Shown: positions 138 through 58,168, numbered from the stretch's first letter. The stretch: 64,000 nt of DNA from IMGVR_UViG_3300043446_004437:152025-216024; one strand, 5' to 3'. Notes: generated by a model not told the origin, from the letters alone. Program-made: numbers and translations.

Positions 138-145
138 TTTGACTC

Positions 146-844: not shown

Positions 845-889
845 TTATAATCCTTTATAAAACTACTAAAACTCATAAAAGAACCTTAT

Positions 890-924
890 AAAAAGATTAT
901 CCCGCTCCTAAGAGCGGGATAATC
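890..924 (-). terminator. intrinsic terminator (13-bp stem), possibly bidirectional
   Basis: Minus strand GATTATCCCGCTC-TTAG-GAGCGGGATAATC followed by TTTTT; the plus strand is followed by CTTTTC. Confidence 0.85.
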
Positions 925-955
925 CTTTTCTCATCGCTGAGCGTCGGTTTCCGTG
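890..955 (-). ncRNA. candidate ~65-nt small RNA or attenuated leader
   Basis: Lies between an extended -10 box (962-970) and the terminator at 890-924; contains only an 8-codon mini-ORF (934-908) with no clear SD. Confidence 0.3.
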
Positions 956-976
956 ATAATGATTATATCACAGAAA
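948..976 (-). promoter_or_regulatory. extended -10 promoter (TGATATAAT) inside an operator-like inverted repeat
   Basis: Minus strand TG-A-TATAAT at 970-962; 10/11-bp inverted repeat 948-958 / 966-976 straddles it; no good -35. Confidence 0.55.
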
Positions 977-999
977 ACATAGCGCTCACACTATGTTTT
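972..999 (-). terminator. intrinsic terminator after 1005-1637 gene
   Basis: Minus strand CATAGTG-TGAG-CGCTATG then TTTTCTG, starting a few nt after the stop at 1005. Confidence 0.65.
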
Positions 1000-1004
1000 G
1001 TTTT

Positions 1005-27089: not shown

Positions 27090-30000
27090 TTATTCAGTCC
27101 TTATTAATTGTTCGGAACTATTTATCACAGACTCTGATTCTGTTAAAAGATCTTTAGTATAAACAGAGGTGCCATAATTTCTTGTTACTAATTCCCAGTT
27201 AAGGGTTGCTGGAGTCCCATCTTCATAGTACTCATCCCAAAGAATTAATGGCCATTTTGACGCATTGTTATACAAATTATACAGTCTTAGAACTTCAACA
27301 AGAGCGTAAAATGTCCTCACCCTTTCTTCCCCCCTTGGTTCACCTTCGGAAAGTCTAGATGTATATTCGTTATTGTCCCAATCAAATTTGCTATTTAGTT
27401 CATATGTTTTGTTAAATACATAAGAAAAATTAACATAAAAAGGTTCTTTTAGATCAAAAAATTCTTCTTTAAATTTAAATACTATTTGATTAACATCAAA
27501 TTTATAATTTTTCATAAGAGCAAAAACATTTTCTTTACTTTTTTCCACGGCATCTGATGGAACATTGTAGAAGACTGTCCCTAATGTTCTTTGATACCTT
27601 TCTTTTAGATAATTAATTCTGTTATCATTCCCATTTGGCTCAAAATCTTCTTCTGTCTCAAATTTGTTTGGAGACGTTTTAGATTGTTTTATTCTCACAA
27701 CAAAAGTTTTATTTTCTAAAACCGTTTTTACAAACTCGGCCGCCAACATACCGGGGCTGCCAAAGTCTTCAATAATCAAGTCGTTTGTTATTGGCTCGGA
27801 ACTATATCTTGTTTGTTTTTCATCGTCTAAATTAAAAATTAATTTATTATCTATTGGCGTTATTGTATTTTGTAAATTTGAATCGTAAAACGCGCTTACA
27901 GGACCATAAAGATCAATCGAAGATTGAGTTGGTGTTAATTCATATGTAAAATAGTTAACAATATTTGGATTGAAATTTGGATCAACCACTTGAACCGATA
28001 GAACATTATGAGTTCCGTCAAACGGATAGCCAAGATTTTTGATTATTACTTTATCACCAGCAACAAGTTGATTGTTTTGTATTTTAGCTGGAATTAAATT
28101 ATTCTCTATGGCTCTAGGTATTGGATATCCGTACGCATCTTTTATAATCTGTTCATTGTCATCATAGTTGTATCCGCCAGTAACCAAGGTTGCGTAATAT
28201 TTATTGTTAACTAGTTTAATATTTTTTCCTATTATCCAACCATTTTTTGATGTTTCAGTATAACCAATCTGGATTTTTTCCGAAACGTTTATGCCATCTA
28301 AACGTACTGTAAATTTTACATTTGGATTTAAAACATCTTCTACATGTATTGTATCTCCGTCAGTAACCCCAGAACCGTTTAGCCCACTGCCCTTACTTAA
28401 AGTGCACAGAACTTTAAAGAAAGGCTCAAAGCCTGTTTTTTCTGGACCGAGGCCAGACAAACCCAATACCTGCGCATGAACAAGAGCATTTTCATAACTT
28501 GCATATCTTACAAAAGCTGAGGTATCTTTTTCCGACCAACCAAGACTCTTCATCAAATCATTTGTTCTTATATATTGGTATCCTTCCGCCGAACGAGTTT
28601 TTGTTCTGACTCCCAATATACCAGGAAGAAGGCTTATAGAATGATATCTGCCAACAACCATCCCCTGATTATAAGACAGGCCAGCTTCCATTGGTTGACC
28701 ATTTCTAGTAAGGTATTGCACATAGCAGCCGTGTTGATCTAGAAGGTTATTCCTAACCCATTTCCAAGCTTTCCAAACCAATGGCCCAAGAAGCAAACCA
28801 GCTCCAGCCACTATAGGCGCTGCTCCAACTCCCACTGCTGTGCCTGCAATAGCGGCACTTCCCGCAGAAGCTATCCCGTATCCGGCCGTACCTATGCCAA
28901 CTGCTAAACCAGCTGTGCCGGAGATAACTCCAGCTATTGCCGATGCATCTACCTGACCGTTATTGCCATTTTTCTGAGCTTGTTGTCTTATTGCGTCTCC
29001 GAGATTTGAATTTGTAAATCCAGATGCAGTTACATTAGCAATCACATCTTTAACTAAAGCAGAAGACCCACCAGTAAACTGCATGCCGCCAATTAGCTGA
29101 GGACTAAGTGAGTTACCCAACGCATCGAGGGATATTTCCCCACCCATTGTTAAGCCAGCATTTCCTGCTCTTAGGGAATCTAAGTATATTCTAGTATCGT
29201 TTCTTACGGTTTGAACATTCAACCAAGAATGCAGCCAAGAAGTCATAAACCATCTAGCTGGATCATTAATTGTAACAAGTGCATTAGGAGTTATAGATGT
29301 AACGTATCCAAGCTCGGAATTAAAATGATGCACGACTTGTTCAACTTCAAACATGCCATACATTCTTTCGTATATATCAGCCAAATATACTAAGTCATGT
29401 GGTCTTATGTCTGGGTTACCAAGAATTATTATCTCTCCACTATATATATCTTTTACCGATTCCCTCAAATGACTTAACGCAACCCTCTTGGCGCTCAATT
29501 CATCTGGTGCCCCAGTAACGTTTTTTGAAATACCTCTTCCAGTTTCAAATGGGTGTAATAGTGGATGTAAGAAACCAAAAAATCCGCTACCAACAACGTT
29601 GTCAAAATAAATTCCAGTTTCTACTGTAGTTTCTACCTGCCTATCTGCTGGAGCGCCTTTGTCCAAGGAAACTGTTACTGGGTATTTACCGTCAGAAACT
29701 GCTGTTATTGTAGTTGAAACACCAGAATTTTCTTGTATTTGATTTGAAATTATATGAGAAAAAGAACTTAGGTAATGTATTCTTTGGAATGGCTCTCTTA
29801 TTTCCACAACTGGTTCTGCGTACTCTCTTGTAAATGGGTTATCCACTGCCCTTAGTAGAGAGCCTGGTCGACCAAGTTGGTAATAAATAGAATCGTTTAA
29901 AGCTTTGTTTAAAATATTTGCTTGTCTTGCAAGTATGGAACTTTGTGAAAGACCATAGCCAGTTTGCAACATATTGAGTCTAAATACATTAAATAGTGCA

Positions 30001-33000
30001 GATAAGCTATCTGTTACTGCATTGAAGATTTGTCCAATACTTTTATCGTAAAAATCTCCTAAACTATTTAAAGTCTTACTTGCTAAATTTGTTGTGCTAT
30101 TTCCTTCGCTCTTGTTTTTATAAAGTAGTTCTAAAAACTTTTTCTTATCTTTAGCGTAAGTATTTCCTGGGAAAATATATGCTTGGAAAATTTTATCTAT
30201 TGGCTTAAAAGACCAAACATCCCTATTAGGATCATTGTTTAAATAATCTATTTTTCTATCTGGTTTCAAAACTAGCCAAGCTCTTGCATACGCATCAGAC
30301 CAAAGAGCCTGCCTAAATAAACCAACAAGATAATAAAACAAATCTTGAGGACACTTTATTATATTTCCCAGGTCTGCTTCTTCAACATCTTGACCATATA
30401 TATTTCTCATCTGAGTAACATCAAATAAATTTGATTTTAGTAAACTTATCTTTTCTACTGTAAGAGCATTAAAGTATTCTATTAAACCACCATTTTCTAT
30501 AGGCGCATCAATAAAATTCTTTCTTGAAAATTCTATTGCTTCTTGTTGAGAAGAACTTTTTATATCGCCAAATAATAAACTAAATTCATCTATAGCAGTG
30601 CTGCCTGTTTCCCCAAATTTTTTATAAACACCAAATTTTTCTGGCAACGGTTTACCGCCAAATATGTTTTGTATTTCTTCTGGGAAAGGAGTTGTATCAT
30701 TCCAATTCATCAAGTATGTATCTGCAAATATTTTTTTGACACTATCATAAGTATGATAACCATATCTAAATTGGTCCCAAATTTGTTGAGCTTGAGCTAA
30801 TGTTCTACCATTGCCAGCTATAACAGTTGTGTTTATATCATAATCTTCATCATAAAATTTTCTTGATTCAACAGAAGTTGAATCTTGATTTGAAAAAACT
30901 GAGGCAAACTCTACTCTACCGCTAGAGCTATAATCTTTGTCATTTGACTCACTCTTTAATAAATTAATTCCATACGTTACATCTTCTAGATTTTTTCTAC
31001 TTTCATCTCCAATTGGCTTTTGAATTAACGAGTAATAACTCTTGTAATTTCCACCAAATCTATAATCAGTTTCGTTGCTGTTGTTAGCGCTTTCGGGTAC
31101 GTATTGCCTTATTGCCTCCATGCTTGGGTTCTTTAACAGCGCGTAGAGATCGTCTGTCTTATTTGTTGAAACCCAATTTCCAAAACCAATCACAACAGAA
31201 TCTTCTGTCTCAATTCCAGGTGACCCAGGATTAAATGGTTGCAGTTCCTGACCAGTGTTTGGTGATTTTTTTATCTTAAAATTTTTGATAGGGACAACAG
31301 CACTGAATGCTACGCCAAGCGGGATCGTGTTCGGCACGAACGCAAAATAGCATTCTTCTACATCTGGTATTGGTGCGTAACCTTTTTTGTCGTAAATATA
31401 CAAATCTTGTTTTTCTGTATCTTTTTTTACAGAAACATCATAACTTAATATATCTAAATAAAAGGCTGCGTCGGGTGAAACAACTGCATCAACATCAGTT
31501 GATAAAGTTTGTATGACATCTGTTCCGTTTTGGTTTTCCTTGCTCAAATTCGTAGTTTTATTTTCTCCCCAAAGAAAATATGCCGGCTTACACACAACTG
31601 CACTTCCGTTGCCACCGTTGCCAGATGGATTATAAACTAACACATGCATATTTTGATAGTCTTTAGCTTCACCATAAACAGGAGCTTCTTCACTATCAAA
31701 ATAATATTTTTTAAATTTTTTAACCAGTGCGTTATCTGACACATTAACATTATAAGGCCATCTCATGGCTATATAGAATTGTTCTTCTAGATCATTTTTT
31801 GGCGGTTCCCATTCCAAATAGGTAAAAGGATTGGCTCCACCAAATTCTGGATTTAATTCTAAAATTTTAGGATTATTTTGGGAAGATATATTTTTTTCTG
31901 GTGTTGGCATTGTTACCTGTATAGCCTGTTCGTTTGCCACCTTGTCATATGCTTCTGCGTTAAGTGAAAAATCGAGAGGATTATTTAATATTTCATAAGC
32001 TATTGAACCAGATATACTTTGAGAATCTTGATAATTTATATCTGATATAAATAATTCTTTAAATTCTGATCCATAAATTTTTTCTACTTTATTTAATATA
32101 AAGTTTTTATGTGTTGAACCTTTGTCTGTTCCTTGATACCCTAGTTCTGCTAAACCATATTGGAATGAATACGTATCCAAAAAGTTTTCATCGTTTTTTC
32201 TAGTTGTAAAAAACGGAAATCTAAATCTACTAGGAAGTTGTTGTATCTGAGCATGCTTTGTGTTTCTTGTGTCTGAGACAATTTGTTCTCTAGTTCCCAC
32301 TGGCAAGTGAAAGCCCATTGTAACATTGCCTTTTGATTTTGGTAATTTTACAATTATATTTCCATTTGAATCTGTTATTTCTTGGAAATCTTTGTCCATA
32401 AAATTAATTAATATTTTTTGTGACTTCAAATATCCAGCTGTATTAAATATACCTTCTGCATTTTTTTGTAATGCAGCTATTTGATTCAACGCCTCAAGCG
32501 GTTCAGTCCCTCTTAAAAACGCTTCTGCGTCTGCGTAAGGATTTATCGATTTATTAACATCTGTCATTATTTGCATTAAATCAAAATCGGGTTCATTTAT
32601 TTGAGGAGGTATTATCCCTAATTCAGCTGCTTTTTCATCACCAGGATAACCAGTGGTAATAGGGACAACGCCAGATGTATACAACCAGTGAGGTTTGCCG
32701 TAAAAAATTGTTGACCTATCCTCAAATGGTCTAACTGCAACTATATAATTTGGAAGAAGTCTTGCGCAAGTTTGAAACAAATCCCAAACAGATCTCATAT
32801 ACGTTTGAGCTCTAAAAGAAACTTCATCAAACCCAGGCATGTCGTCATCAGAGTTTGGGCTTATTATACCTAGCGTCCTAAATATATTATTACCGCCTCT
32901 GCCACTTAAAACACCCAATAACCCAATGCCTACTCCTACGGTTCCAACAATTGGACCACCCGCTATAAGCATTGCGCCGCCTAACCCGCCTAAAGTAAGA

Positions 33001-36000
33001 CTCCTAAATAACGAAGCGCTTCCTTGAGCGTCTCTTATAGCCCCACCCTTTGTAGCTTGGTCAACAACAGCTGAGGCGTTTGGATCTCCAGAATCGTATT
33101 TAGACATCAAGCTATTCCAAGATCTATCAGACAATCTTGATAGGTATTCAAGTCTAGGATTTGGTTGATCTTCTGGCGTTATAGACGCTACGCTTGTCCA
33201 GCCATCACCTAAGTCCCCGCCTAAAAATTGTGCTATACCAGTTCCATTTCCTGGATATATATTTCTTTTAAATATTTCCATATCTCTTTGTGCGGAAAAG
33301 TTTGACCAAAGCTGACCCATCAAAGAAGCAACGGGATATCTAAACTCTTGCACACCTACGCCAACCATATTCAAAGCTGATTGACCTATGGCAGAACCGC
33401 TCATTTCACTTGCAGCCCTATGTGCATCTGCAATAGAATCAACCATAGCATAATGCTTTGTTGCCTCGGCCTCACTTAATGGCTGGTATAACATAGAACC
33501 AAAATGTCTTATGCCAAATTTATTCTCTGAAAATACTAATCCTCTGTATGCATTAGCAACGCCTTCTCTGAATCTAGAAGTGCCCATAGATAGCAACCTA
33601 ACCATAAGATCTCTTGGCTCTGAAAGCCACAATCCAGTGTTTATGCCACCATCTATTTTGCCGCTATCGCCTTTTTTATTTGTTGAATTTACAACTGCGC
33701 CAAGTTCTATGGCATCTGATTGAGCGGTTACGGTAACAACTTCTCCGTATTCAACTTGAGTTATGGTACCGTTAAACAACGTTTGCAAACTATTTGGGTT
33801 TGAACCATACCCGCCTCTTAGGTGAACTCTTACGCCAGGTTTTAAAACTATATTTTCTATATTTACAACATAATCATTTTTCATATGAGCCAAAAGATTT
33901 CTGGCTTTATTCAGAGTATTATCAAGTATTGACCCTATACCAGCAGAAACCGACGCACCAAGTGGCGAATCTGCGCTAAATATATCTGAAGATGCGGTTT
34001 TAGTTAGTTTTGAATAAAGATTAGATACTCTAAAAATTAGAGTATCTCCTAAAAGATCTTCTGAGGAAACAACAGAAAAATCTACAATTGATTGTAAACC
34101 ATAAAAATTATCAAACAATTTTACGCCAGCAAAATACCCACCTTCATCTATCAACCATAGCATGTATGTTGGAAACGCTCGTATCATTCTTCCAGAAACG
34201 TCACGGTATTGTGTGTCTACAAGCATTTTTTCCCAGTGCATGTTTACACTTTTTGGCGGGTCTCCTTTTCCTGAAGACCACTCAGGAACATTTTGATCAC
34301 CATGAGAAATTGGACTACCATAATCTGATAATGGAGTCATACCAGCAACAGCGGAACGTGTCGTCCCCAAAGCTGGGTTAGCGTGTTCATCTATTGGTAT
34401 TGGTGCTAATTCATATACTTTAGAATTTTTTTGTACTTTTACTCCATCAATTGTTAAATAAAATCTTCCATTTTTTTCTGTATCAATATAACCAAAATTA
34501 GTTCCATAAGCAGTTACGAGCATTGCTGGAATTTTATTAGGGTCATTTGGGTCTTTAATTGGCAGCATGTATATATTGGCGTGCGCGTTTAATTCTTCTG
34601 GAATAAAACTTATGTCACTTTCGTCAGGAAGACTGTATTCTCCAGCCAAAGCCATTTCTACTTCTTTATAAGTTTCAATACTTGATGAAGATAAATTGCC
34701 TACTTGATAAGGAGCAGAGAATATTTTATTTACTATTTCAGGTTCTTGTTTTTCCACAAAGTCAATGTAATCGGTCAACACTTGCGAACTAGTTTCTTTT
34801 GCTATTTCTGTTGCACCGCTGGGATCATAAGGATACTTTATCCAACTTTCAAAAGCTTTTAAGAAAATTTTATAATCTATTCCATTTTCTTTTAACCAAT
34901 TAGTTAATGATCTAAGTTTTATCTTTTTTTCTTCTATATCTGAAGCAGAATATTCTCTAATAAACTGTGGTAAATATTTGTACGCTTTGGCGACTTGTTG
35001 TGATTCAGATACAACTTCATCTGTAGGCCCAAAAATAATGGGCTTAACCTGATTTGAAACATTATAAACAATATCTTTGTCAAACATTTCAAAAGATCTA
35101 AAATAAAAATCTGGATCTAAAGTTCCAACTGTTTCATTTTTTGAATCTTTTACCTCAAGCGGCAGGTCTGGATATGCATTAAACGCGCCCCACATTTGTT
35201 TAATTCTTAAAAATGGATTTCTTTTTGAAGAAAAATTATCTATAAAATCTTTTTGTTGAACAGAACTTAATTTTTCTCTTGTTTGTTGGAAGACATCAAA
35301 GTCCATAAGTGTTATGTTTACTTGGTAAACATGCGGATAATCTGGGACTGTCGAAACAGAATAATTTGACGGCATAACATACTTGATGCCACACAGCGCC
35401 GTTATAATATTTTTTATCCCCATAAATCCTAATACTCCGCTAGCGTGTTCTAATCTTGCAAGAGCATTTACGTGATCAAAAATCTTTTTAATTTTAGCTA
35501 ATTCTTTTTCGCCAACTACAGTCATTGATATATTGATATAAGAATCTTTCCCACCTATATGTTGATAGGTTGGCTCATCTTGCATTTGCAGTTGCAGCTT
35601 AGCTAAGTTATTGCCAAGAGAAACGCTAACACCAGTTACCGTTACAGAAGCTGGATCTAAGTCCACTTTCATCATCGGCACTTCCCATTCCCTAAATTGG
35701 AAAGAGCCAGATTTTGCTCTAATTGCTTCCATTAAAGCTTGTATCGGACCACTAGAATAGAACCTTTCATACACAAGCACATTGAAAGCATCGCTCACTT
35801 GATTTTTTATTTCTTTTTTAAGATTTTGATACGCTTCAGAACCGAGTTCCCCATCTGCAGGTATCGTTATCTTTTGTTCTTTTGCTTTTTTATTTACTAA
35901 TGTATTTGTTGTTTGATCAAGATAAGCTTTTGAACTTAAAGCTATTTTTTTCATATACTCTTTTACTGCGGTCAGCGTTACGCTTGTGAGAGTTTCGCCG

Positions 36001-38543
36001 TTGACGATATATGTAGATGGGCCTATTCCTGCGGGTACTTCGTTGCTATTAATGTCTTCTATATATTTTTTTTCTGAAGAAGATAAACCTTTGTTTTCTA
36101 TTTTAAAAACTTTTACAAGATAAGCGTATACTTTTTCTTTTACTTCTCCATCTGAATTGCCTGCTACTAAAATATCAATTGAGTCTTTTAAGATACTTCT
36201 AATGTTTCTATTATATTGGCCATTAATAGCTAAGTTGTAAGTATTTGCTAAAGTTACGCCATAATCAGAAGCATTGTTGACATTGATGCCAAAATAGTTT
36301 AATATCCTTGACCAAAAATCTTCGTTTTGATCAGACATAAGTTCTTCATTATTTTGTCTAAAAGAGCTCATATCTGGCAAGAATATTTTTGTTTGAGATT
36401 CAACCGGTATATAAAAAGAAATATTATTTCCATTAGTCCATTCGCTGTATATATTTGTAGCTAATTGGCTCTCATTTAAATCAACAGTATTTATGCCGTA
36501 AGATTTTTCTAATGAACCAGAAGAATTAGGTACTGTGTTTGCAAATGGTTCTTTTTGGTCTGCGCCTTTGACATCTGTTTGCTTTTGCAAAAATTCTCCA
36601 TTAACATAATTACTTAGAACTCCAGCTGCTTTGCCCATGTATTGTCTGTACTTACCCCAATGTATCGCTTGATTAAAATCTGTTATCATTGGCATAAGTG
36701 GTTTATGGTTAAAGTTTAATAACTCAATATCTACCGCTAACGCAAATGGGAAATTTGGTATGGTTTGTACTTGCATATTAGAAAGTGCAACTGCCGTAAT
36801 GCCGTGAACGCTATTTAGATAAGAATTTTTAACCGGAAGAAAAGGAGAATATTTAAAAGCGGCCACCATCCCTCTAAGAGAAGAAAGAAACTTATCTATT
36901 TTTTTATCTGAATCACCGTTAGAAGAAAAGTCTATAACAAAATTATCTTTTAGTTGGATTCTAGATGCATCTTCTATTGATATGCCCCAAATTTCTTCAT
37001 AGTTAGGAAAGAATAGTCTAATGGAAATAGAGGTTTCTTTATAGCCAGAATTAAATTTTGGAGAATTTTTTTGCCTTAATGCTCCTCCTGTTAAACTGCC
37101 TGTTTTAAATGCGGTATTAATGTTAATTGATAATGGTGGAACATAAAAGTTTGCTGCACCTAATCTAAAATGGAAAATATCAGGAGACTGTGGAGCTATA
37201 TTTGCCCTATAAGGAGATTTCTGTAAAACTTCTCTGATTCTTTCTGCGGTGTTTTTAAAATTCTTTGGATCATTTGGCCCATAAAAAACTAAAGAAAATA
37301 CATCTTGACCACTTCTAGCGCCCAAAGCTGTTTGCAAGGATTTCAAAAAATCTTGCATGTTATTAACCGTATCTTCTTCTCCTCCTCCAGTGCCGTCGTT
37401 TGAATAGTCACCTGTTACAGCAAGTGCGTCAAAGAAAAAGGTAACCAAAGACGGGAAATAAATATTTACCATTGACAATGTAATTGGATCTCTTGAGATC
37501 CTTTGAACAGTAAAAATTAATTGATCCAACCAAGCTTGATCTTGCGTTGCATTAAAATAATCAAATGCTGACTTTGTAACGGTTGCTGAACTGGACAATC
37601 TTTTTTCCCCAAACTTAGCTATATCAGATGCATAAGCCGCAAGTGTTAAAAGACCAGAATCTTTTATCCTTAAAAAAATTCGCTCTAATTGATCTGCGTC
37701 AATTGCTCCACTTTTGGGGTCAATTGCTGGCTCGTTGCCTTCAAGTGGTTTAAAAGCTCTATAAAAGCCAGTCCAATCAACTGCGGCAACGTTTCTATCT
37801 GGTGCAGCGTTTCGTCGCACACTATCCAATTTTTCTTTTACAAGTGCTGTATCGTATTGCCCATAAACCACTTTAAACACTTCTTCTAAATAATTCAAGC
37901 CAGTGCTTGCGCCAGCACCTAATTCATCGCCCCCTAAAGATAATTGATCATTTAACCAAGAGAGTTCTTGTAAAGTTATTGTTCCTAAATTTTCGTTTTT
38001 TGTTTTTGATGAACTGTAATATTTTTTCCAAATTTTTAATCTATTATATAATACGTCTGCGGCTACTATAACAGTTGAAAAACTGGCACTACCCAAAAAT
38101 GCTTTATAAATAAAAAAATCTTCTCTTGCCTCTTCTGCGTTTAAAGAATATTTACTGCGGTAGAGGCCGGATGCGTCATCGACGATAGAAGAATACCTGG
38201 TTAAGATAGAATCATCTAATTCAGCTAACGGTTGTTTTATCCCAGTCAAATAATATCTTATACCAACGTTTGCCGCAAAAACGCTAAACTGATCTTTTTC
38301 AGATAAGTTCAAAGAAAATTTAGGATAAGACTCAAGAACTTGATCTGTTACATATGCTGGCAGTTGGCCATAATTAAAAAAGGTGTCCAACTGCTCAATG
38401 CTAACTGATTTGTTAACATTATCTGGATTTAAAAAATTTATTATTTTTTCTATATAAGAAAGATTCATTAAATAATTTAAATATTTATATGCGGCAGAAT
38501 CTATTGTATGTTCTAGAAAATAATTAACACTTGGTTGAGCCAT
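27090..38543 (-). CDS. giant baseplate hub protein (gp27/VgrG-like core) with C-terminal thermonuclease-like domain (3817 aa)
   Basis: Hub motifs PGVRVHLRGGYG..LFNGTITQV..VTVTAQSDAIEL and GEIIILGNPDIRPHDLVYLAD..FEVEQVVHHF; SNase motifs VTDGDTI, VRLDGINVSE, ERYQRTLG. Confidence 0.75.
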   Translation of the reverse strand: MAQPSVNYFLEHTIDSAAYKYLNYLMNLSYIEKIINFLNPDNVNKSVSIEQLDTFFNYGQLPAYVTDQVLESYPKFSLNLSEKDQFSVFAANVGIRYYLTGIKQPLAELDDSILTRYSSIVDDASGLYRSKYSLNAEEAREDFFIYKAFLGSASFSTVIVAADVLYNRLKIWKKYYSSSKTKNENLGTITLQELSWLNDQLSLGGDELGAGASTGLNYLEEVFKVVYGQYDTALVKEKLDSVRRNAAPDRNVAAVDWTGFYRAFKPLEGNEPAIDPKSGAIDADQLERIFLRIKDSGLLTLAAYASDIAKFGEKRLSSSATVTKSAFDYFNATQDQAWLDQLIFTVQRISRDPITLSMVNIYFPSLVTFFFDALAVTGDYSNDGTGGGEEDTVNNMQDFLKSLQTALGARSGQDVFSLVFYGPNDPKNFKNTAERIREVLQKSPYRANIAPQSPDIFHFRLGAANFYVPPLSININTAFKTGSLTGGALRQKNSPKFNSGYKETSISIRLFFPNYEEIWGISIEDASRIQLKDNFVIDFSSNGDSDKKIDKFLSSLRGMVAAFKYSPFLPVKNSYLNSVHGITAVALSNMQVQTIPNFPFALAVDIELLNFNHKPLMPMITDFNQAIHWGKYRQYMGKAAGVLSNYVNGEFLQKQTDVKGADQKEPFANTVPNSSGSLEKSYGINTVDLNESQLATNIYSEWTNGNNISFYIPVESQTKIFLPDMSSFRQNNEELMSDQNEDFWSRILNYFGINVNNASDYGVTLANTYNLAINGQYNRNIRSILKDSIDILVAGNSDGEVKEKVYAYLVKVFKIENKGLSSSEKKYIEDINSNEVPAGIGPSTYIVNGETLTSVTLTAVKEYMKKIALSSKAYLDQTTNTLVNKKAKEQKITIPADGELGSEAYQNLKKEIKNQVSDAFNVLVYERFYSSGPIQALMEAIRAKSGSFQFREWEVPMMKVDLDPASVTVTGVSVSLGNNLAKLQLQMQDEPTYQHIGGKDSYINISMTVVGEKELAKIKKIFDHVNALARLEHASGVLGFMGIKNIITALCGIKYVMPSNYSVSTVPDYPHVYQVNITLMDFDVFQQTREKLSSVQQKDFIDNFSSKRNPFLRIKQMWGAFNAYPDLPLEVKDSKNETVGTLDPDFYFRSFEMFDKDIVYNVSNQVKPIIFGPTDEVVSESQQVAKAYKYLPQFIREYSASDIEEKKIKLRSLTNWLKENGIDYKIFLKAFESWIKYPYDPSGATEIAKETSSQVLTDYIDFVEKQEPEIVNKIFSAPYQVGNLSSSSIETYKEVEMALAGEYSLPDESDISFIPEELNAHANIYMLPIKDPNDPNKIPAMLVTAYGTNFGYIDTEKNGRFYLTIDGVKVQKNSKVYELAPIPIDEHANPALGTTRSAVAGMTPLSDYGSPISHGDQNVPEWSSGKGDPPKSVNMHWEKMLVDTQYRDVSGRMIRAFPTYMLWLIDEGGYFAGVKLFDNFYGLQSIVDFSVVSSEDLLGDTLIFRVSNLYSKLTKTASSDIFSADSPLGASVSAGIGSILDNTLNKARNLLAHMKNDYVVNIENIVLKPGVRVHLRGGYGSNPNSLQTLFNGTITQVEYGEVVTVTAQSDAIELGAVVNSTNKKGDSGKIDGGINTGLWLSEPRDLMVRLLSMGTSRFREGVANAYRGLVFSENKFGIRHFGSMLYQPLSEAEATKHYAMVDSIADAHRAASEMSGSAIGQSALNMVGVGVQEFRYPVASLMGQLWSNFSAQRDMEIFKRNIYPGNGTGIAQFLGGDLGDGWTSVASITPEDQPNPRLEYLSRLSDRSWNSLMSKYDSGDPNASAVVDQATKGGAIRDAQGSASLFRSLTLGGLGGAMLIAGGPIVGTVGVGIGLLGVLSGRGGNNIFRTLGIISPNSDDDMPGFDEVSFRAQTYMRSVWDLFQTCARLLPNYIVAVRPFEDRSTIFYGKPHWLYTSGVVPITTGYPGDEKAAELGIIPPQINEPDFDLMQIMTDVNKSINPYADAEAFLRGTEPLEALNQIAALQKNAEGIFNTAGYLKSQKILINFMDKDFQEITDSNGNIIVKLPKSKGNVTMGFHLPVGTREQIVSDTRNTKHAQIQQLPSRFRFPFFTTRKNDENFLDTYSFQYGLAELGYQGTDKGSTHKNFILNKVEKIYGSEFKELFISDINYQDSQSISGSIAYEILNNPLDFSLNAEAYDKVANEQAIQVTMPTPEKNISSQNNPKILELNPEFGGANPFTYLEWEPPKNDLEEQFYIAMRWPYNVNVSDNALVKKFKKYYFDSEEAPVYGEAKDYQNMHVLVYNPSGNGGNGSAVVCKPAYFLWGENKTTNLSKENQNGTDVIQTLSTDVDAVVSPDAAFYLDILSYDVSVKKDTEKQDLYIYDKKGYAPIPDVEECYFAFVPNTIPLGVAFSAVVPIKNFKIKKSPNTGQELQPFNPGSPGIETEDSVVIGFGNWVSTNKTDDLYALLKNPSMEAIRQYVPESANNSNETDYRFGGNYKSYYSLIQKPIGDESRKNLEDVTYGINLLKSESNDKDYSSSGRVEFASVFSNQDSTSVESRKFYDEDYDINTTVIAGNGRTLAQAQQIWDQFRYGYHTYDSVKKIFADTYLMNWNDTTPFPEEIQNIFGGKPLPEKFGVYKKFGETGSTAIDEFSLLFGDIKSSSQQEAIEFSRKNFIDAPIENGGLIEYFNALTVEKISLLKSNLFDVTQMRNIYGQDVEEADLGNIIKCPQDLFYYLVGLFRQALWSDAYARAWLVLKPDRKIDYLNNDPNRDVWSFKPIDKIFQAYIFPGNTYAKDKKKFLELLYKNKSEGNSTTNLASKTLNSLGDFYDKSIGQIFNAVTDSLSALFNVFRLNMLQTGYGLSQSSILARQANILNKALNDSIYYQLGRPGSLLRAVDNPFTREYAEPVVEIREPFQRIHYLSSFSHIISNQIQENSGVSTTITAVSDGKYPVTVSLDKGAPADRQVETTVETGIYFDNVVGSGFFGFLHPLLHPFETGRGISKNVTGAPDELSAKRVALSHLRESVKDIYSGEIIILGNPDIRPHDLVYLADIYERMYGMFEVEQVVHHFNSELGYVTSITPNALVTINDPARWFMTSWLHSWLNVQTVRNDTRIYLDSLRAGNAGLTMGGEISLDALGNSLSPQLIGGMQFTGGSSALVKDVIANVTASGFTNSNLGDAIRQQAQKNGNNGQVDASAIAGVISGTAGLAVGIGTAGYGIASAGSAAIAGTAVGVGAAPIVAGAGLLLGPLVWKAWKWVRNNLLDQHGCYVQYLTRNGQPMEAGLSYNQGMVVGRYHSISLLPGILGVRTKTRSAEGYQYIRTNDLMKSLGWSEKDTSAFVRYASYENALVHAQVLGLSGLGPEKTGFEPFFKVLCTLSKGSGLNGSGVTDGDTIHVEDVLNPNVKFTVRLDGINVSEKIQIGYTETSKNGWIIGKNIKLVNNKYYATLVTGGYNYDDNEQIIKDAYGYPIPRAIENNLIPAKIQNNQLVAGDKVIIKNLGYPFDGTHNVLSVQVVDPNFNPNIVNYFTYELTPTQSSIDLYGPVSAFYDSNLQNTITPIDNKLIFNLDDEKQTRYSSEPITNDLIIEDFGSPGMLAAEFVKTVLENKTFVVRIKQSKTSPNKFETEEDFEPNGNDNRINYLKERYQRTLGTVFYNVPSDAVEKSKENVFALMKNYKFDVNQIVFKFKEEFFDLKEPFYVNFSYVFNKTYELNSKFDWDNNEYTSRLSEGEPRGEERVRTFYALVEVLRLYNLYNNASKWPLILWDEYYEDGTPATLNWELVTRNYGTSVYTKDLLTESESVINSSEQLIRTE

Positions 38544-38552
38544 AGATTACCG

Positions 38553-39005
38553 TTAAATCATATTCAGTTTAGAGATAGCATTTATTCTATCCGAGGCGGA
38601 GTTTTCTTGAGCAACCCCACTATAATTATTAATTATACCATTTGGTTGTATATTTGTAAAGTTTGTTTTCATAAAGGGACTTGCGTGTGATTCAAAGTTT
38701 TTTACGTATCTTGCTTGCTGAAGCCTTTGATTCATATAGCCAGAATTGTTCATTTGGATATAGGCCGATTTGCCATCCATCAACCCTTCTTTGGATCCTT
38801 TTATAGTATCTGAGGTATTTAATCTGCTTTTAGATTCATAAACTGTATCTTTAGCATAGGCTGCATTTGCAGCTGATTTATTACCTTTATTTGATGCTAT
38901 TTTTGCTGCATAGGCGTTTGATGTTTTAGTCCTTGGAGAAGTATCTTTTGTTTTTGCAGCGGCTTCTTTAAGGTTTTTATTTTGTTTATCAGCGCCAAAA
39001 ATCAT
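38553..39005 (-). CDS. small basic K/A/N-rich protein (150 aa)
   Basis: ORF track; AAAGGT SD-like sequence; low-complexity basic N-half. Confidence 0.7.
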   Translation of the reverse strand: MIFGADKQNKNLKEAAAKTKDTSPRTKTSNAYAAKIASNKGNKSAANAAYAKDTVYESKSRLNTSDTIKGSKEGLMDGKSAYIQMNNSGYMNQRLQQARYVKNFESHASPFMKTNFTNIQPNGIINNYSGVAQENSASDRINAISKLNMI

Positions 39006-39014
39006 AATACACCT

Positions 39015-41882
39015 TTAGAAAGAACTAGCTATTTCTGCGTATGGGTCTTTCCCAGCCTGAGGAGATCTACGATACATAGTAGTGTTCATATTGAATTTTC
39101 CTAACCCCATAGCTTGTTCTCTAAAATTAGAAACATCTTTAATATTACCATATAAATTAACTTTATAATCTATATTTGGGTTATAAGCCATCCTACCTAT
39201 TTGAGGAATTTCTGCTAATCTTTTTGGATAATCATCTTCATATGCCGAACCACCTGGTAAAAGCGGTGGCCCCTGTATATCTTCTTGACTTCTATCTTTA
39301 ACACCTTCATAAACAAAACTGCCAACCACAAGAGCACCAGCTGCTATAACTGAATTTTTAAATAATTTATTTTCTTGAAATAAAGTTTTTAAACTACCAT
39401 CTTTAATAAACTCACTAAACCTTTTAAAAGACGCTTTTGCGACAGGCGCTTCTTCTCCAGAAATAACCCTTCTTAATTCTTCTGCTATTTCTGTTGTTGG
39501 CTCAGAAGCTGCTGGCGCTAACCTTTCTGCAAAAGCGGGGTCAAAAAATTCCGATCCTAATTCTTTGTATCTTGAATTATCTAAAATTGCTTTTAATTTA
39601 TTTGATAAACCAGCTCTAATTTTATTAATATCTCTATTCATAAAAACATCATTTAATATTTGTCTATCATCGGATAATAGTGCCAGCAAATCTAATTCTG
39701 GTGATACGCTTTGTTCTCCAAATGCTATATAGCGACGAAAATCTAAAATGCCCTGTGCCGTTTCTTTTGCTTTAATAGTTATATTTTCTGTTGTTGCATC
39801 TCCTAATAAACCAATTGTTTTTTGAACGTCGTCACTTTCTAAAATATCTTTAGCGTAGTTGGCTTTTCTTTTTACATCTGCTGCGTTCATCATTTGTCTT
39901 AAATTTTGGGAAAATTCACCTTCATCTCGTAAAACAGATTCTGGAAAATAATTTAAATCTTCATACAAAAAATCTAATCCAAGTTGATTGCTTCTCTTTT
40001 TCAGAATATTTATCATTTCCTCAACAGAAACGTTAGACGCTCTAGCCGCTTCTCTTATTTCGTTAGTGACTCTATCGCCCATAGCTAATTTTCTTTTAAA
40101 TAATTCATCAATAGCTTCGTTATTTAAATCTTTTATATCGGCAGAGAAGTTAATTATCCTTGATGCTTCGTCATTATGTTTTTGTAATAAGAAATCTGCG
40201 GCTCTTCTAGATTCTTCGGTATATTCTAATGATGCCAAAGACGGATCAATAACTCTACTTCTTCTTCTTATTTCATTTTGAGCTTCTTGATTTGCTGCGC
40301 TTATTATTCCTGCACCGTGCAGTCTTGTTAAACTTGAGTATGCGTGTTTTTCATTTGCTCCAAACAATCTTATTAAAAGATCTCTTCTTTGTTCTGCCGT
40401 GGCTGGCATTTTTTCTTCAGATAATTGACCAATAATTTCCGCAAATGCGTTTGGATCAGTAGCCGATCCTTTTATGCCTTCAGCTATTCCTCTCATCATT
40501 GTTTCTATGTCAACAATTTGCATCCTGCCTTTTAACAATTGTTGATCTATTTTTGGTAAAAATCTTTCTTTAAATTTTTCAGCTTTTGCGGCATCTGTGA
40601 CCGCCATTTCTGTTGCCGCTTCAATAACCTGTGTGTATTCAGCTCCAACTCTTTTACCCAAGTTTTGGATTGCTTGTGTCCCTATTTCAGAAAGTGATGC
40701 ACCACCATTAACTTTTTGTGCTGCTCTTATAGCTGCGTCTACATCGTTAGAAAAATCTATTGCAGATATTAAACTGCCTACTCTTTCTCTAATTATATCA
40801 ATATCATCAATTACTTTGGGCATTACGCCAGAAGCACCTTGCGCAAAGTCAATAGCTACTTCTTGAGAAACTAAACCTACTTGATGTTCAAGAATTTTTT
40901 TAATTCTTCCTTCTTGCCCACCCATATTAATCAACTCTTCTATTAAATCTTGAGTTTGATTGAGCTTAGATCCAACCACCATTGATCTATTAACATAAGT
41001 TCCTAACAATGAAGCTTCCTGTGAAGTTGCAACATTAAACATTTTTTTAAAAATAGCTTCTTCTTTCATTGCGCTGAAAACAGGATTATTTTTATTTGTT
41101 TCAAAAATATTATTAATTGTTTGAAACTGATTATTTTCTAAAGCCGTTTTTAATGAATTATATATAGATGCATCTAATTGATCTTTGTATGCGTTTGTTT
41201 CAAGAAGTTTTTGTAATTCTTCTTTGATCAAAAAACCTTGTTCTTTATTAAAAGCATTTTCTTCTGCAAATAATTTAAATATTCCAGTTCTTGTATATCC
41301 TTCGCTGTTGGCTAATGAAGAAGAACCTTGCCTTTGAATTGCTCTTAGTATTCTTCTGTTATGGGCGCCGGCTGTTCCCTCAAGTGAGCCATCTAATAAC
41401 CTAAGTCCGGCTTTTCCTCTTGATTCAGCAAAGTCATATATGTCTATAACTAGTTCTTCTGCTTGTTCTGCATTTATCTTTTTGTATTTTGAATCTTCCC
41501 AAAGAACTGAATGAAGTTCGTCTAACGATGCCGCTTTAGAACCACCAACAGAAGATCTAAAATCTTCTAACAAACCCCTAAATCTTTCGTTCTGGAAATA
41601 TGATCTTAATGTTCCCTCGTCTAAATTTGCTTTTGCATATATTGATTCTTCTGGACCAGAAGGCTGTCTATATATGCCAAAAAGAAGCCTTTTTTTATCT
41701 GCGTTATCTTTATACGTCATCATTTTAGTTAAGACTTTATCGTCTAAGTCAAAACCACCCAATGAATGGAAAAACCTGTCTGTCATTCCGGGACCAAATA
41801 ATAACCTATTATCATTCACCCTAAATTCCATAAGTTGTGTTGATATACTTTCCCCTACATCTTTTATATCAAACCCGGTGCT
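39015..41882 (-). CDS. putative two-barrel RNA polymerase, catalytic (beta-prime-like) part; track ORF starts at ATG 41831
   Basis: LLFGP..SLGGFDLDDKV, YRQPSGPEE, LLGTYVN and VAIDFAQG parallel RdRP/YonO motifs; the frame is open from 41882; C-terminal hydrophobic segment SVIAAGALVVGSFVY. Confidence 0.65.
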   Translation of the reverse strand, partial: STGFDIKDVGESISTQLMEFRVNDNRLLFGPGMTDRFFHSLGGFDLDDKVLTKMMTYKDNADKKRLLFGIYRQPSGPEESIYAKANLDEGTLRSYFQNERFRGLLEDFRSSVGGSKAASLDELHSVLWEDSKYKKINAEQAEELVIDIYDFAESRGKAGLRLLDGSLEGTAGAHNRRILRAIQRQGSSSLANSEGYTRTGIFKLFAEENAFNKEQGFLIKEELQKLLETNAYKDQLDASIYNSLKTALENNQFQTINNIFETNKNNPVFSAMKEEAIFKKMFNVATSQEASLLGTYVNRSMVVGSKLNQTQDLIEELINMGGQEGRIKKILEHQVGLVSQEVAIDFAQGASGVMPKVIDDIDIIRERVGSLISAIDFSNDVDAAIRAAQKVNGGASLSEIGTQAIQNLGKRVGAEYTQVIEAATEMAVTDAAKAEKFKERFLPKIDQQLLKGRMQIVDIETMMRGIAEGIKGSATDPNAFAEIIGQLSEEKMPATAEQRRDLLIRLFGANEKHAYSSLTRLHGAGIISAANQEAQNEIRRRSRVIDPSLASLEYTEESRRAADFLLQKHNDEASRIINFSADIKDLNNEAIDELFKRKLAMGDRVTNEIREAARASNVSVEEMINILKKRSNQLGLDFLYEDLNYFPESVLRDEGEFSQNLRQMMNAADVKRKANYAKDILESDDVQKTIGLLGDATTENITIKAKETAQGILDFRRYIAFGEQSVSPELDLLALLSDDRQILNDVFMNRDINKIRAGLSNKLKAILDNSRYKELGSEFFDPAFAERLAPAASEPTTEIAEELRRVISGEEAPVAKASFKRFSEFIKDGSLKTLFQENKLFKNSVIAAGALVVGSFVYEGVKDRSQEDIQGPPLLPGGSAYEDDYPKRLAEIPQIGRMAYNPNIDYKVNLYGNIKDVSNFREQAMGLGKFNMNTTMYRRSPQAGKDPYAEIASSF

Positions 41883-58167: not shown

Positions 58168-58168
58168 T

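What the first reader, a model, noticed from the sequence alone, without database searches (positions are those of the whole stretch)
41661..41807. Non-canonical catalytic loop GGFDLDD, with the R-x-P motif placed after it
Seen: the Asp loop is D-L-D-D-K, lacking the Gly of DxDGD; YRQPSGPEE lies 24 residues after the loop; RLLFG occurs twice, 39 aa apart, flanking the loop. Established: in RNAP beta-prime (NRAP..NADFDGD) and RdRPs the R/K-x-P strand comes before the loop. Inference: a permuted or rewired catalytic barrel with a one-residue-shorter loop, with the RLLFG pair possibly reflecting the barrel's internal pseudo-symmetry. I recall a similar GGxDxDD..RSP arrangement in prophage RNAPs of the Corynebacterium NCgl1702 type but cannot verify it. 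This order mismatch is also the main caveat to the RNAP call.
Basis: partly seen in the sequence, partly recalled or inferred. Interest (0 to 1): 0.7.

Follow-up and report, generated by a model that had tools for sequence, protein, structure and literature searches.

The report
Odd active site in phage RNA polymerase
The flagged motif is the invariant metal-binding loop of a large, unnamed family of polymerase-like proteins in ~200-kb freshwater phages; their predicted core resembles RNA-silencing RNA polymerases, but the catalytic signature is D-x-D-D instead of D-x-D-G-D and the usual Arg-x-Pro element sits after the loop instead of before it.

Summary
GGFDLDD (41739-41759, minus strand), RQP 24 residues later (41661-41669) and two RLLFG copies are all present. 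D-x-D-D, R-x-P and a Glu five residues after the Pro are 100% conserved in 140 family members down to about 20% identity.

The "938-aa ORF" is only the back half of a gene. Relatives encode one ~1,600-aa protein. Here 19 extra bases (41862-41880) shift the frame, so the loop lies at about residue 700.

Predicted strand order around the loop is canonical (β4-β5-α2-loop-β6), so a permuted barrel is not supported. The R-Q-P lies on an added strand after β6. The RLLFG repeat is lineage-specific.

The gene sits between tail-sheath and baseplate genes, so it is probably an injected early-transcription enzyme. The frame break is real: it is identical in independent samples and conserved in a ~5%-divergent strain. 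Four other lineages carry a +1 break in the same loop.

Verdict: a new variant of a known kind, on computational evidence only.

The parts
41869..43851 (-). 660-aa ORF: the front part of the polymerase-like gene. It carries an N-terminal region with invariant K221/K224/R225, the candidate DPBB-B residues D359, R435 and K444, a helical connector, and the first half of the catalytic barrel up to the variable loop.
   Evidence: It aligns to residues 1-659 of the intact 1,607-aa P0002 at 91% identity. Core-domain profile positions 1-63 map here. All family-conserved residues are kept.
41862..41880 (-). 19 extra nucleotides (CACCGGGTTTGATATAAAA) that break the reading frame between ATA AAG (Ile-Lys) and GAT GTA GGG. 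The upstream frame ends at TGA 41871..41869. The downstream frame is open from 41882.
   Evidence: Shown by comparison with intact relatives. A relative's 16,112-nt contig lacks exactly 19 nt here. Contigs from two other samples are identical across the junction, and a ~5%-divergent strain keeps it with 0 gaps.
39015..41831 (-). 938-aa ORF: the back part of the gene. It carries the second half of the catalytic barrel with the Asp loop, the R-Q-P strand, a helical region with a bridge-helix candidate, and a ~600-aa C-terminal region.
   Evidence: 87% identical to P0002 residues 671-1607. Profile positions 62-163 map here. 29 of 37 listed substitutions in a divergent strain fall on third codon positions.
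41739..41759 (-). GGFDLDD: the candidate Mg-binding Asp loop (D28, D30, D31 of the 938-aa ORF), followed by K32.
   Evidence: G, D, D, D are invariant in 115-140 sequences. In both models the motif lies in a loop between a helix and a strand.
41646..41669 (-). R55-Q-P57-S-G-P-E-E62: the invariant Arg-x-Pro...Glu element after the loop, a candidate counterpart of the 'Pro-gate' loop.
   Evidence: R, P and E are 100% conserved and Q 88%. The element sits at the end of strand E308-315, which follows post-loop strand E293-302 after a 5-residue turn. The role of R-x-P in QDE-1 is described in PMC9508822.
41793..41807 (-). First RLLFG (residues 9-13): the short strand before the helix that leads into the Asp loop (β5 position).
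   Evidence: Model strand E270-273. Family consensus is [KR]-[ML]-L-F-[GA].
41676..41690 (-). Second RLLFG (residues 48-52): part of the added strand that ends in R-Q-P.
   Evidence: Model strand E308-315. Family consensus is R-L-[AG]-F-x. There is no internal-repeat signal between the two segments.
42520..42777 (-). Candidate second-barrel (DPBB-B) catalytic residues: D359 (42775-42777), R435 (42547-42549) and K444 (42520-42522).
   Evidence: Conserved in 98%, 89% and 90% of the family. The structural alignment ranges place model residues 13-45 on QDE-1 723-755, which hold R738 and K743. The region holding D359 was not modelled.
40848..41015 (-). A long conserved helix (residues ~273-302; G277, N281, Q292), which is a bridge-helix candidate, and the invariant D328 (40848-40850).
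   Evidence: Model helix H534-563. G947 is 99%, N951 98% and D998 100% conserved. The alignment ranges to QDE-1 end at 1121-1122, which puts D998 near trigger-loop D1116. This is an approximate inference.
39225..39356 (-). A C-terminal hydrophobic segment (NSVIAAGALVVGSFVY, 39300-39356) and the conserved GPPLLPGGSAYEDDYP motif (39225-39272).
   Evidence: This is the strongest conservation outside the core; coordinates are. Function was not tested.
27090..50429 (-). Gene block with conserved order: a 2,193-aa ORF whose stop overlaps the 660-aa ORF's start by 4 nt, the polymerase-like gene, a 150-aa ORF, and a 3,817-aa ORF.
   Evidence: ORF list. The same order is seen in relatives. The block is flanked by tail sheath (54126-55406) and baseplate wedge (22367-23533) genes.

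Best explanation
The flagged stretch is the catalytic centre of a ~1,600-aa single-chain 'two-barrel' nucleotide polymerase. It is most likely a DNA-templated RNA polymerase of the QDE-1/RDR/YonO/crAss-gp66 kind. It is encoded in the contractile-tail gene block of a 216-kb freshwater phage.

Inferred mechanism:
- D359, R435 and K444 on the upstream ORF supply the second barrel's acidic and basic residues.
- The invariant R-Q-P returns to the base of the Asp loop on an extra strand appended after the barrel's last strand. There it does the job of the canonical R-x-P 'Pro-gate', that is, ribose 2'-OH and minor-groove sensing.
- The canonical R-x-P position, at the β3/β4 junction, is a variable loop in this family.

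The enzyme is probably carried in the virion and delivered with the DNA to transcribe early genes. In this genome the gene is interrupted in that variable loop by 19 nt. The two parts are still under selection. They are therefore probably either joined by a +1 recoding event or made as two chains that assemble.

Shown: the conservation, the split, the predicted fold resemblance and the gene context. Inferred: metal binding, the role of R-Q-P, the RNA polymerase activity and virion delivery.
For: Conservation:
- D698, D700, D701, R725, P727 and E732 are 100% conserved in 140 members. D362, R438, K447, N951 and D998 are 89-100% conserved.
- All of them are kept in the window's two ORFs.

Fold:
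- The core model has pLDDT 86.5 and pTM 0.84.
- In an unbiased scan of 48,161 chains the only matches longer than 240 aa are QDE-1, P74 gp62 and maize RDR2.
- Plant RDRs top the AlphaFold Swiss-Prot search (E 1.4e-3 to 1.3e-2, probability up to 0.85). They also recur in the AlphaFold clusters (probability 0.66-0.91).
- The domain-only model draws a list dominated by DPBB folds, including RNAP catalytic barrels.

Context:
- The gene lies between tail sheath and baseplate wedge genes. It is translationally coupled to a 2,193-aa neighbour, and the synteny is conserved.
- No canonical beta', RdRP or T7-type RNAP and no paralogue was found in the complete 216-kb genome.
- Precedents for virion-delivered two-barrel RNAPs are crAss gp66 and the tape-measure-fused P23-45 gp96.

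Split gene still in use:
- The junction is identical in two other samples. A ~5%-divergent strain keeps it with 29 of 37 listed substitutions at third codon positions.
Against: - All structural scores are middling. Z stays at or below 6.4, under the tool's own caution line of 8, and the best Foldseek PDB match has E 0.045.
- No sequence method connects the family to any RNAP. Pfam, PHROGs and NCBIfam give nothing. PDB sequences give nothing. The RdRP and Rpb1 HMMs find nothing in the genome. hhalign against a YonO-family profile gives probability <1%.
- D-x-D-D spacing has no precedent among characterised two-barrel RNAPs. The crAss preprint states that position 4 is Gly in all RNAPs studied before gp66.
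- The first half of the second barrel, around D362, was not modelled.
- No model coordinates were available, so the Arg-to-Asp distance was never measured.
- The Mg/ATP co-fold was not run.
- The gene is frame-broken here, with no ribosome-binding site before the downstream ATG.
- Virion delivery rests on gene position alone.
Confidence: 0.62

Rival explanations
1. The barrel is circularly permuted. The R-Q-P...E segment would be the true homologue of the canonical β3/β4 R-x-P junction, moved behind the Asp loop by a duplication-and-loss rearrangement. The added strand would occupy the place of canonical β3.
For: - R-Q-P-S resembles the R-x-P-[ST] element of cellular RNAPs (from memory of the Rpb1 and beta' motifs).
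- R-x-P-x4-E is shared with the YonO family, where R492, P494 and E499 are invariant.
- A local profile alignment does pair R/R, P/P and E/E.
- The canonical position before β4 has no conserved R-x-P and is indel-rich.
- The added strand runs back towards the loop, as canonical β3 does.
Against: - Only one strand plus a short one follow the loop. A half-barrel permutation would need β1-β2-α1-β3, about 45-60 residues, yet R-Q-P is only 24 residues away.
- Whole small DPBB domains map in sequential order onto residues 34-114 of the domain model, before R-Q-P.
- The R-x-P...E profile match is not better than shuffles (55 of 200 reach it).
- No internal-repeat signal was found.
Confidence: 0.15
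2. It is not a polymerase. It would be a tail-lumen or ejection protein (tape-measure-like) whose DPBB-like domain has another role, for example a cell-wall-cleaving barrel of the MltA/RlpA/'3D' kind that uses Asp residues, or a purely structural one.
For: - The gene sits where tape-measure and hub genes lie in contractile-tail phages.
- Language-model features place residues 150-760 nearest to tape-measure clusters (score <= 0.70, a weak lead).
- The C-terminal ~600 aa are helical with a hydrophobic segment.
- There is no sequence link to RNAPs.
Against: - The long matches (250-326 aligned residues) span both barrels and the helices after them, not one barrel, and all are RNAPs.
- No MltA, RlpA or expansin-type barrel appears among the domain matches.
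- The conserved set of 4 Asp, 3 basic residues and R-x-P is the polymerase inventory.
- A tape-measure role and a polymerase role are not exclusive, as P23-45 gp96 shows.
Confidence: 0.13
3. In this particular genome the gene is a dead remnant. The 19-nt insertion would have inactivated it, and the 938-aa ORF would not be made.
For: - Close relatives at 87% identity are intact.
- There is no Shine-Dalgarno-like site within reach of ATG 41831, although many other window genes have one.
- The Met is also present in an intact relative, so it is not a dedicated start.
Against: - The same junction appears in contigs from other samples and years.
- It is retained, stop codon included, in a strain with 69 substitutions per 1,411 nt. 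Those substitutions are strongly biased to third codon positions downstream of the break (29 of 37).
- All 28 family-conserved residues are intact on both sides.
- Neither long ORF has any further stop.
- Four other lineages carry a +1 break in the same loop.
Confidence: 0.1

Closest known systems
Eukaryotic RNA-silencing polymerases QDE-1 / RDR2 (PDB 7Y7P, 7Y7R, 7EU1, 7RQS; Pfam PF05183 RdRP)
   Different: - No detectable sequence similarity. PF05183 does not hit.
- The triad is D-x-D-D rather than D-Y-D-G-D.
- R-x-P lies 24 residues after the triad rather than 45 residues before it.
- The protein is about 600 aa longer, with a hydrophobic C-terminal part.
- It is phage-encoded and sits in a tail module.
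YonO of Bacillus prophage SPbeta (single-subunit DNA-dependent RNAP; PMC5467207)
   Same: A phage-borne single-chain two-barrel polymerase. F-D-x-D-(G)-D-K is flanked the same way (F before, K after). R-x-P-x4-E is present in both.
   Different: - YonO has the canonical order (LRSPHLF, then FDNDGD) and keeps the Gly.
- It is 839 aa and is not in a tail module.
- Profile-profile comparison gives no signal (probability <1%).
[quoted passage not shown]
   Same: - Very divergent two-barrel RNAPs encoded among virion or tail genes and injected to transcribe early genes.
- gp66 already breaks the 'Gly at position 4' rule with DFDID.
- Their neighbours are likewise giant proteins.
   Different: - Those enzymes keep five-residue D-x-D-x-D spacing (DFDID in gp66, DFDGD in gp96). 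I did not check the position of R-x-P in them.
- The host phages are a podovirus and a siphovirus, whereas this phage has contractile-tail genes.
- There is no sequence similarity (tblastn against 50,697 phage records found nothing).
Split multisubunit RNAPs of jumbo phages (phiKZ-like; PMC7598289)
   Same: A polymerase encoded in pieces in a ~200-kb phage. Some lineages of this family also place a gene boundary between the two barrels.
   Different: Those are beta/beta'-type enzymes detectable with Pfam models. The break here lies inside the catalytic barrel and is a frameshift rather than a clean gene boundary.

Membership tests
Two-barrel RNA polymerase superfamily (criteria of Ruprich-Robert & Thuriaux 2010, PMC2919709) | Invariant Mg-binding D-x-D-x-D triad in the catalytic barrel | tested here: not met
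   Three invariant Asp are present, but as D-x-D-D with no fourth-position residue, in all 140 members. This meets the composition but not the defining spacing.
Two-barrel RNA polymerase superfamily | Invariant R-x-P in the catalytic barrel, N-terminal to the Asp triad (QDE-1 R962/P964; Rpb1 R446/P448) | tested here: not met
   An invariant R-Q-P exists, but it lies 24 residues C-terminal to the triad. The canonical position before β4 is a variable loop without R-x-P. Spatial equivalence was not tested because no coordinates were available.
Two-barrel RNA polymerase superfamily | Second barrel supplying one Asp and two basic residues (QDE-1 D709, R738, K743) | tested here: inconclusive
   The candidates D362 (98%), R438 (89%) and K447 (90%) occur in that order. 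The structural alignment ranges are compatible for R438 and K447. The segment holding D362 was outside the model.
Two-barrel RNA polymerase superfamily | Overall fold: two double-psi beta-barrels facing a cleft, followed by a bridge helix and trigger loop | tested here: inconclusive
Two-barrel RNA polymerase superfamily | Mg-dependent, template-directed NTP polymerisation | not testable with these tools
   No biochemical data exist. The Mg/ATP co-fold request was not folded.
Pfam RdRP (PF05183) / YonO-like family | Significant match to the family HMM or profile | tested here: not met
   PF05183 finds nothing in the genome at E <= 10. hhalign of the 115-sequence profile against a 24-sequence YonO-family profile gives probability 0.16%.
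Multisubunit RNAP beta' (PF00623 RNA_pol_Rpb1_2) | Match to the catalytic-barrel HMM containing NADFDGD | tested here: not met
   There is no match in the 216-kb genome at E <= 1, while all 14 control genomes ring.
Virion-delivered phage RNAPs (functional class: N4 vRNAP, crAss gp66, P23-45 gp96) | Protein present in virions and responsible for host-RNAP-independent early transcription | not testable with these tools
   Only gene position speaks for it. The gene lies between tail sheath and baseplate wedge, is coupled to a 2,193-aa neighbour, and the synteny is conserved.

The most novel reading that the evidence does not exclude
A natural RNA polymerase in which two supposedly universal features of the two-barrel active site have been rebuilt: the metal triad is compressed to D-x-D-D and the Pro-gate R-x-P is transplanted to a new strand behind the loop. 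In several lineages, including this genome, the catalytic barrel is also encoded across a +1 frame break exactly between its two ββαβ halves. The enzyme would then be made either by programmed +1 recoding after a Lys/Glu codon (AAG-C / GAG-C / AAA-AAA-N contexts) or as two polypeptides that assemble a split double-psi barrel. The second case would be a living analogue of the proposed half-barrel ancestor.
Probability: 0.2. Interest if true: 0.85.

Novelty: new variant of a known kind. Interest (0 to 1): 0.64.

Why it matters
The D-x-D-x-D triad and the preceding R-x-P are treated as universal, order-fixed signatures of every two-barrel polymerase, from bacterial RNAP to RNA-silencing enzymes. 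They are also the handles used to find such enzymes in phage genomes.

This family numbers at least 183 clusters at 50% identity and 123 IMG/VR contigs, typically from ~170-210-kb freshwater phages. It keeps the residue inventory but changes the spacing and the order. Motif- or HMM-based screens therefore miss it.

If the family is active, three things follow:
- The catalytic loop tolerates loss of the 'obligatory' fourth residue.
- The ribose-sensing Arg-Pro can be supplied from another strand. That bears on how these barrels evolved.
- A third virion-type RNAP lineage, this one in contractile-tail phages, would join crAss gp66 and P23-45 gp96.

The recurrent +1 break between the half-barrels offers a tractable test case for recoding or split-barrel assembly.

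Tried and rejected
- Sequence libraries: Pfam, PHROGs and NCBIfam scans of the two ORFs, intact homologues and neighbours gave no family.
- PDB sequence search with a profile found nothing.
- tblastn of three family members against 50,697 GenBank phage records found nothing.
- Canonical RNAP HMMs (PF00623, PF05183, PF00940) found nothing in the genome. The PF00940 control also failed, so that result is uninformative.
- PF05183 against the SPbeta record gave no hit even on YonO, so YonO was taken from the annotation instead.
- hhalign of the family profile against YonO alone and against a YonO-family alignment gave probability <1%.
- Segment-level tests gave nothing better than column shuffles. 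R-Q-P...E against YonO R-S-P...E was reached by 55 of 200 shuffles. The Asp-loop segment aligned spuriously, with 12 of 200 shuffles reaching the score.
- The internal-repeat test for the RLLFG idea gave nothing.
- The ESM Atlas shape search gave nothing useful. The Atlas feature search returned only weak tape-measure leads.
- Foldseek of the barrel-only model against PDB gave nothing significant.
- Other explanations of GGFDLDD were considered and dropped because the fold matches are two-barrel polymerases. These were the primase-polymerase 'DxD' motif, Toprim, the nucleotidyltransferase G[GS]...DxD motif, the GGDEF/Cas10 palm and the class II terpene cyclase DxDD motif (the only literature hits for 'DxDD').
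- Iyer et al. 2003 (PMC151600), which describes NCgl1702, is not held. The P23-45 paper's supplements hold no FDLDD or RQPSG string.
- Two apparent N-terminally short homologues (P0114, P0026) are contig-edge truncations rather than splits.
Full report
**1. What is at the coordinates**

The window is the last 64 kb of a single 216,024-bp IMG/VR virus contig. The contig has 36.6% G+C and CheckV rates it 100% complete. All large ORFs in the window are on the minus strand.

The finding lies at the start of a 938-aa ORF (39015..41831). Its first 62 residues read MEFRVNDNRLLFGPGMTDRFFHSLGGFDLDDKVLTKMMTYKDNADKKRLLFGIYRQPSGPEE.
- GGFDLDD(K) at residues 25-32.
- R55-Q-P57, 24 residues after D31.
- RLLFG at residues 9-13 and 48-52.

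**2. The ORF is half of a gene**

A search of 5.8 billion proteins found 58 homologues. Most are 1,600-1,640 aa and cover the upstream 660-aa ORF (41869..43851) plus the 938-aa ORF in one chain.

P0002 (1,607 aa) is 87-91% identical to the window's two ORFs. Against it the window has 19 extra nucleotides between ...AAT ATA AAG and GAT GTA GGG... (41880..41862). The upstream frame therefore runs into TGA at 41871..41869. The downstream frame, which is +1, is open from 41882. The Asp loop thus lies at about residue 700 of a ~1,600-aa protein.

The break is not an assembly error, for four reasons:
- Contigs from two other samples of another study are identical over 41813-42000.
- A 1,411-nt contig from a third study spans 41172-42582 with 69 substitutions and no gap, and it keeps the stop (AAG CAT CGG ATT TGA).
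- The 16,112-nt contig of an intact relative lacks exactly 19 nt there.
- Of 37 listed substitutions in the divergent strain downstream of the break, 29 fall on third codon positions. All family-conserved residues are intact on both sides.

The downstream part is therefore still under selection.

**3. Conservation**

A profile of the core, searched against 1.84 billion representative proteins, found 183 clusters. Of these, 119 have E < 1e-30, and nearly all are 1,500-2,000 aa.

In a 115-sequence alignment reaching 17-20% identity, the only invariant columns are G695, D698, D700, D701, R725, P727 and E732 in P0002 numbering.

Over 103-140 members, the following positions are at least 85% conserved:
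- N-terminal region: K221, K224, R225, R233.
- Candidate second barrel: D362, G363, R438, K447, K479, E481, D504.
- Upstream of the Asp loop: G589, P596, R631.
- Around the Asp loop and R-Q-P: F697, K702, Q726.
- Long helix and beyond: G947, N951, Q962, D998.

Loop variants such as GGFDFDD, GGYDNDD and GTFDLDD all keep D-x-D-D. This is the pattern expected of an active site.

The RLLFG pair is different. The first copy has consensus [KR]-[ML]-L-F-[GA] and the second R-L-[AG]-F-x. A profile comparison of the two segments finds nothing.

**4. Fold**

No sequence library recognises the protein. Pfam, PHROGs, NCBIfam and PDB sequences all give nothing.

An AlphaFold2 model of residues 410-1010, built with the 115-sequence alignment, is confident (pLDDT 86.5, pTM 0.84). 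Its structural matches are as follows:
- Foldseek against PDB puts QDE-1 first but not significantly (E 0.045).
- In AlphaFold DB, plant RDR2, RDR4, RDR1 and RDR5 lead the Swiss-Prot search (E 1.4e-3 to 1.3e-2, probability 0.44-0.85). 'RNA-dependent RNA polymerase' clusters recur among fold clusters at probability 0.66-0.91.
- BFVD adds three significant uncharacterised proteins from uncultured tailed phages.

**5. The active-site inventory**

[quoted passage not shown] This family has a matching set: D362, R438, K447, R725, P727, D698, D700 and D701. The structural alignment ranges (model 13..595 on QDE-1 723..1122) are compatible with three correspondences:
- R438/K447 with R738/K743.
- The Asp loop with D1007-1011.
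- D998 with trigger-loop D1116.

Two things differ.

First, the triad is D-x-D-D. Against YonO, read from the SPbeta record, F-D-N-D-G-D-K becomes F-D-L-D-D-K, so the Gly is missing. The crAss gp66 preprint notes that before gp66 (DFDID) every studied RNAP had Gly at position 4. A motif without that position is a step further.

Second, R-x-P follows the triad. In QDE-1 it precedes the triad by 45 residues and forms the 'Pro-gate' loop. There R962 binds the 2'-OH groups and P964 touches the minor groove (PMC9508822). YonO likewise has LRSPHLF before FDNDGD.

**6. Permuted or rewired?**

Both models give the same element order around the loop:
- a long strand (LLEFRVNDN),
- a short strand (RLLFG),
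- a helix (MTDRFFHS),
- the loop (LGGFDLDD),
- a strand (KVLTKMMTY),
- a 5-residue turn,
- a strand (KRLLFGIY) ending in R-Q-P,
- a short strand (SIYAKA),
- then helices.

The first five elements are the canonical second half of a double-psi barrel (β4-β5-α2-loop-β6).

- RNAP catalytic barrels: P23-45 gp96, Rpb1, archaeal A', phiKZ nvRNAP, Pol I, QDE-1 914-1030 and maize RDR2.
- Cdc48/NSF/VAT/Pex1 N-domains.
- Designed 86-residue DPBBs, which map whole and in sequence order onto model residues 34-114.

R-Q-P, at residues 131-133 of that model, therefore lies outside the six-stranded barrel on an appended strand. A half-barrel permutation would need about 45-60 residues between the loop and R-x-P, not 24.

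By ordinary hairpin geometry the end of the return strand lies opposite the start of β6, next to D700/D701. This suggests the Arg is close to the loop. I could not measure it, because no coordinates are exposed and the Mg/ATP co-fold was not run.

The canonical R-x-P site, just before β4, is in this family a length-variable, unconserved loop.

My reading is that the barrel keeps its canonical order and the Arg-Pro element is supplied from a new strand. The alternative is that the R-Q-P...E segment is the displaced homologue of the canonical junction. YonO also has an invariant R-x-P-x4-E. This remains possible, but it has no statistical support.

**7. Context and likely role**

Reading in the direction of transcription, the genes run:
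- tail sheath (54126-55406 and 56281-58197),
- small tail genes,
- a 2,193-aa ORF whose stop overlaps the 660-aa ORF's start,
- the polymerase-like gene,
- a 150-aa ORF,
- a 3,817-aa ORF,
- baseplate wedge/J (22367-23533),
- large fibre-like ORFs.

The order giant ORF, polymerase, 150 aa, giant ORF recurs in relatives.

The genome has no recognisable beta', RdRP or T7-type RNAP and no paralogue of this gene.

The family occurs on 123 IMG/VR contigs, the largest of 170-210 kb. It occurs on one GTDB genome, a 106-kb contig of a Cyclobacteriaceae MAG. It is absent from 50,697 GenBank phage records. The runs that hold the sequence are freshwater, lake and aquatic metagenomes.

There are two precedents for such an enzyme: crAss gp66, which is virion-packaged and injected, and P23-45 gp96, which is fused to the tape measure. 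By analogy, the most likely role is a virion-delivered RNAP for early genes. This rests on position only.

**8. The frame break as a phenomenon**

The family profile places the break between positions 62 and 63 of the barrel domain. That is in the loop between β3 and β4, the boundary of the two ββαβ halves.

Four other lineages have a break in the same loop, all in the +1 direction:

| Locus | Pieces (aa) | Junction | Note |
|---|---|---|---|
| L005 | 682+975 | AAG C GGA | One nt more than the intact relative P0032 |
| L006 | 697+950 | AAA AAA G GTC | |
| L008 | 665+162+806 | AAA AAA T GGC | About 20 codons upstream; possibly low quality |
| L009 | 536+248+1298 | GAG C GGA | |

In the window, skipping C41880 after AAG would give ...VNIK-TGFDIK-DVGES..., a six-residue insertion in a variable loop. 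A 19-nt hop from AAG to AAA would give ...VNIK-DVGES..., exactly colinear with relatives.

There is no Shine-Dalgarno-like site before ATG 41831, although about half of the window's genes have one.

None of 80 IMG/VR loci has a stop in this loop. Several distant lineages instead have a gene boundary 91-155 residues upstream, between the barrels.

Five breaks in one direction would arise by chance about 1 time in 16. Two of the five lie in A-runs, which are prone to sequencing errors. I regard programmed +1 recoding and a split barrel as open possibilities, not findings.

**9. Verdict**

The RNAP reading is the best-supported one (about 0.6). 'Permuted barrel' and 'RLLFG symmetry' are not supported, and 'rewired' is a fair description.

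The family appears undescribed. No motif string was found in the literature searched, and there is no family model for it. It would be a new variant of the two-barrel polymerases. All functional statements are inferences that await biochemistry.

Noticed in passing
window 41862-41880 (minus strand); also loci L005:3990-4060, L006:2250-2300, L008:4925-4945, L009:2935-2975: The polymerase-like gene is frame-broken in the loop between the two halves of its catalytic barrel. The break is population-level: it is identical in other samples and kept in a ~5%-divergent strain. Four other lineages have a +1 break in the same loop, at AAG-C, GAG-C or AAA-AAA-N contexts. Candidate explanations are +1 frameshifting, a 19-nt bypass (matched ATA AAG / ATA AAA codons), termination-reinitiation, or two chains that assemble.
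   Followed up: partly
loci L073/L074, L077, L088/L089, L058 (IMG/VR); proteins P0033-P0049: In distant lineages the same polymerase is encoded as two genes, with a boundary 91-155 residues upstream of the Asp loop, between the two barrels. One lineage of ~983-aa proteins ends just after the bridge-helix candidate and lacks the C-terminal ~600 aa. The family therefore exists in one-, two- and possibly three-gene versions.
   Followed up: partly
window 43848-50429 and 27090-38543 (minus strand): Giant ORFs of 2,193 and 3,817 aa flank the polymerase gene. Neither has a Pfam match, and the 2,193-aa ORF (the only one scanned) has no PHROG match either. Both have Gly/Ala-rich hydrophobic stretches. 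The order giant ORF, polymerase, 150 aa, giant ORF is conserved in relatives. One of them is presumably the tape measure. I did not investigate them.
   Followed up: no
window 43177-43191 (K221, K224, R225 of the 660-aa ORF) and 43153-43155 (R233): A K-x-x-K-R...R cluster in the N-terminal region is 94-100% conserved across the family, as strongly as the catalytic loop. It lies outside the modelled region. It may be a nucleic-acid-binding element.
   Followed up: no
window 39225-39356 (minus strand): The C-terminus of the 938-aa ORF has a ~19-residue hydrophobic segment followed by the highly conserved GPPLLPGGSAYEDDYP. This may relate to membrane insertion or virion incorporation.
   Followed up: no
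window about 40625-40830 (residues ~335-402 of the 938-aa ORF; model residues 335-402): The helical domain right after the catalytic barrel gave the single highest Z (6.4, 62 residues) to UPF0122/SAV1236 (1xsv). As I recall, that is a small helix-turn-helix protein. It may be a DNA-binding module or only a common helical arrangement.
   Followed up: no
window 59829-60899 and 60966-62072 (minus strand): Two adjacent ORFs of 356 and 368 aa have identical 25-nt upstream regions. The first has fn3 and glycine-rich domains. They look like a recent tandem duplication of a structural gene.
   Followed up: no
window 21101-22348 (minus strand): An ORF next to the baseplate wedge gene matches an exonuclease PHROG strongly (phrog_284, E 6e-44). 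That is an unusual neighbour inside a tail module.
   Followed up: no
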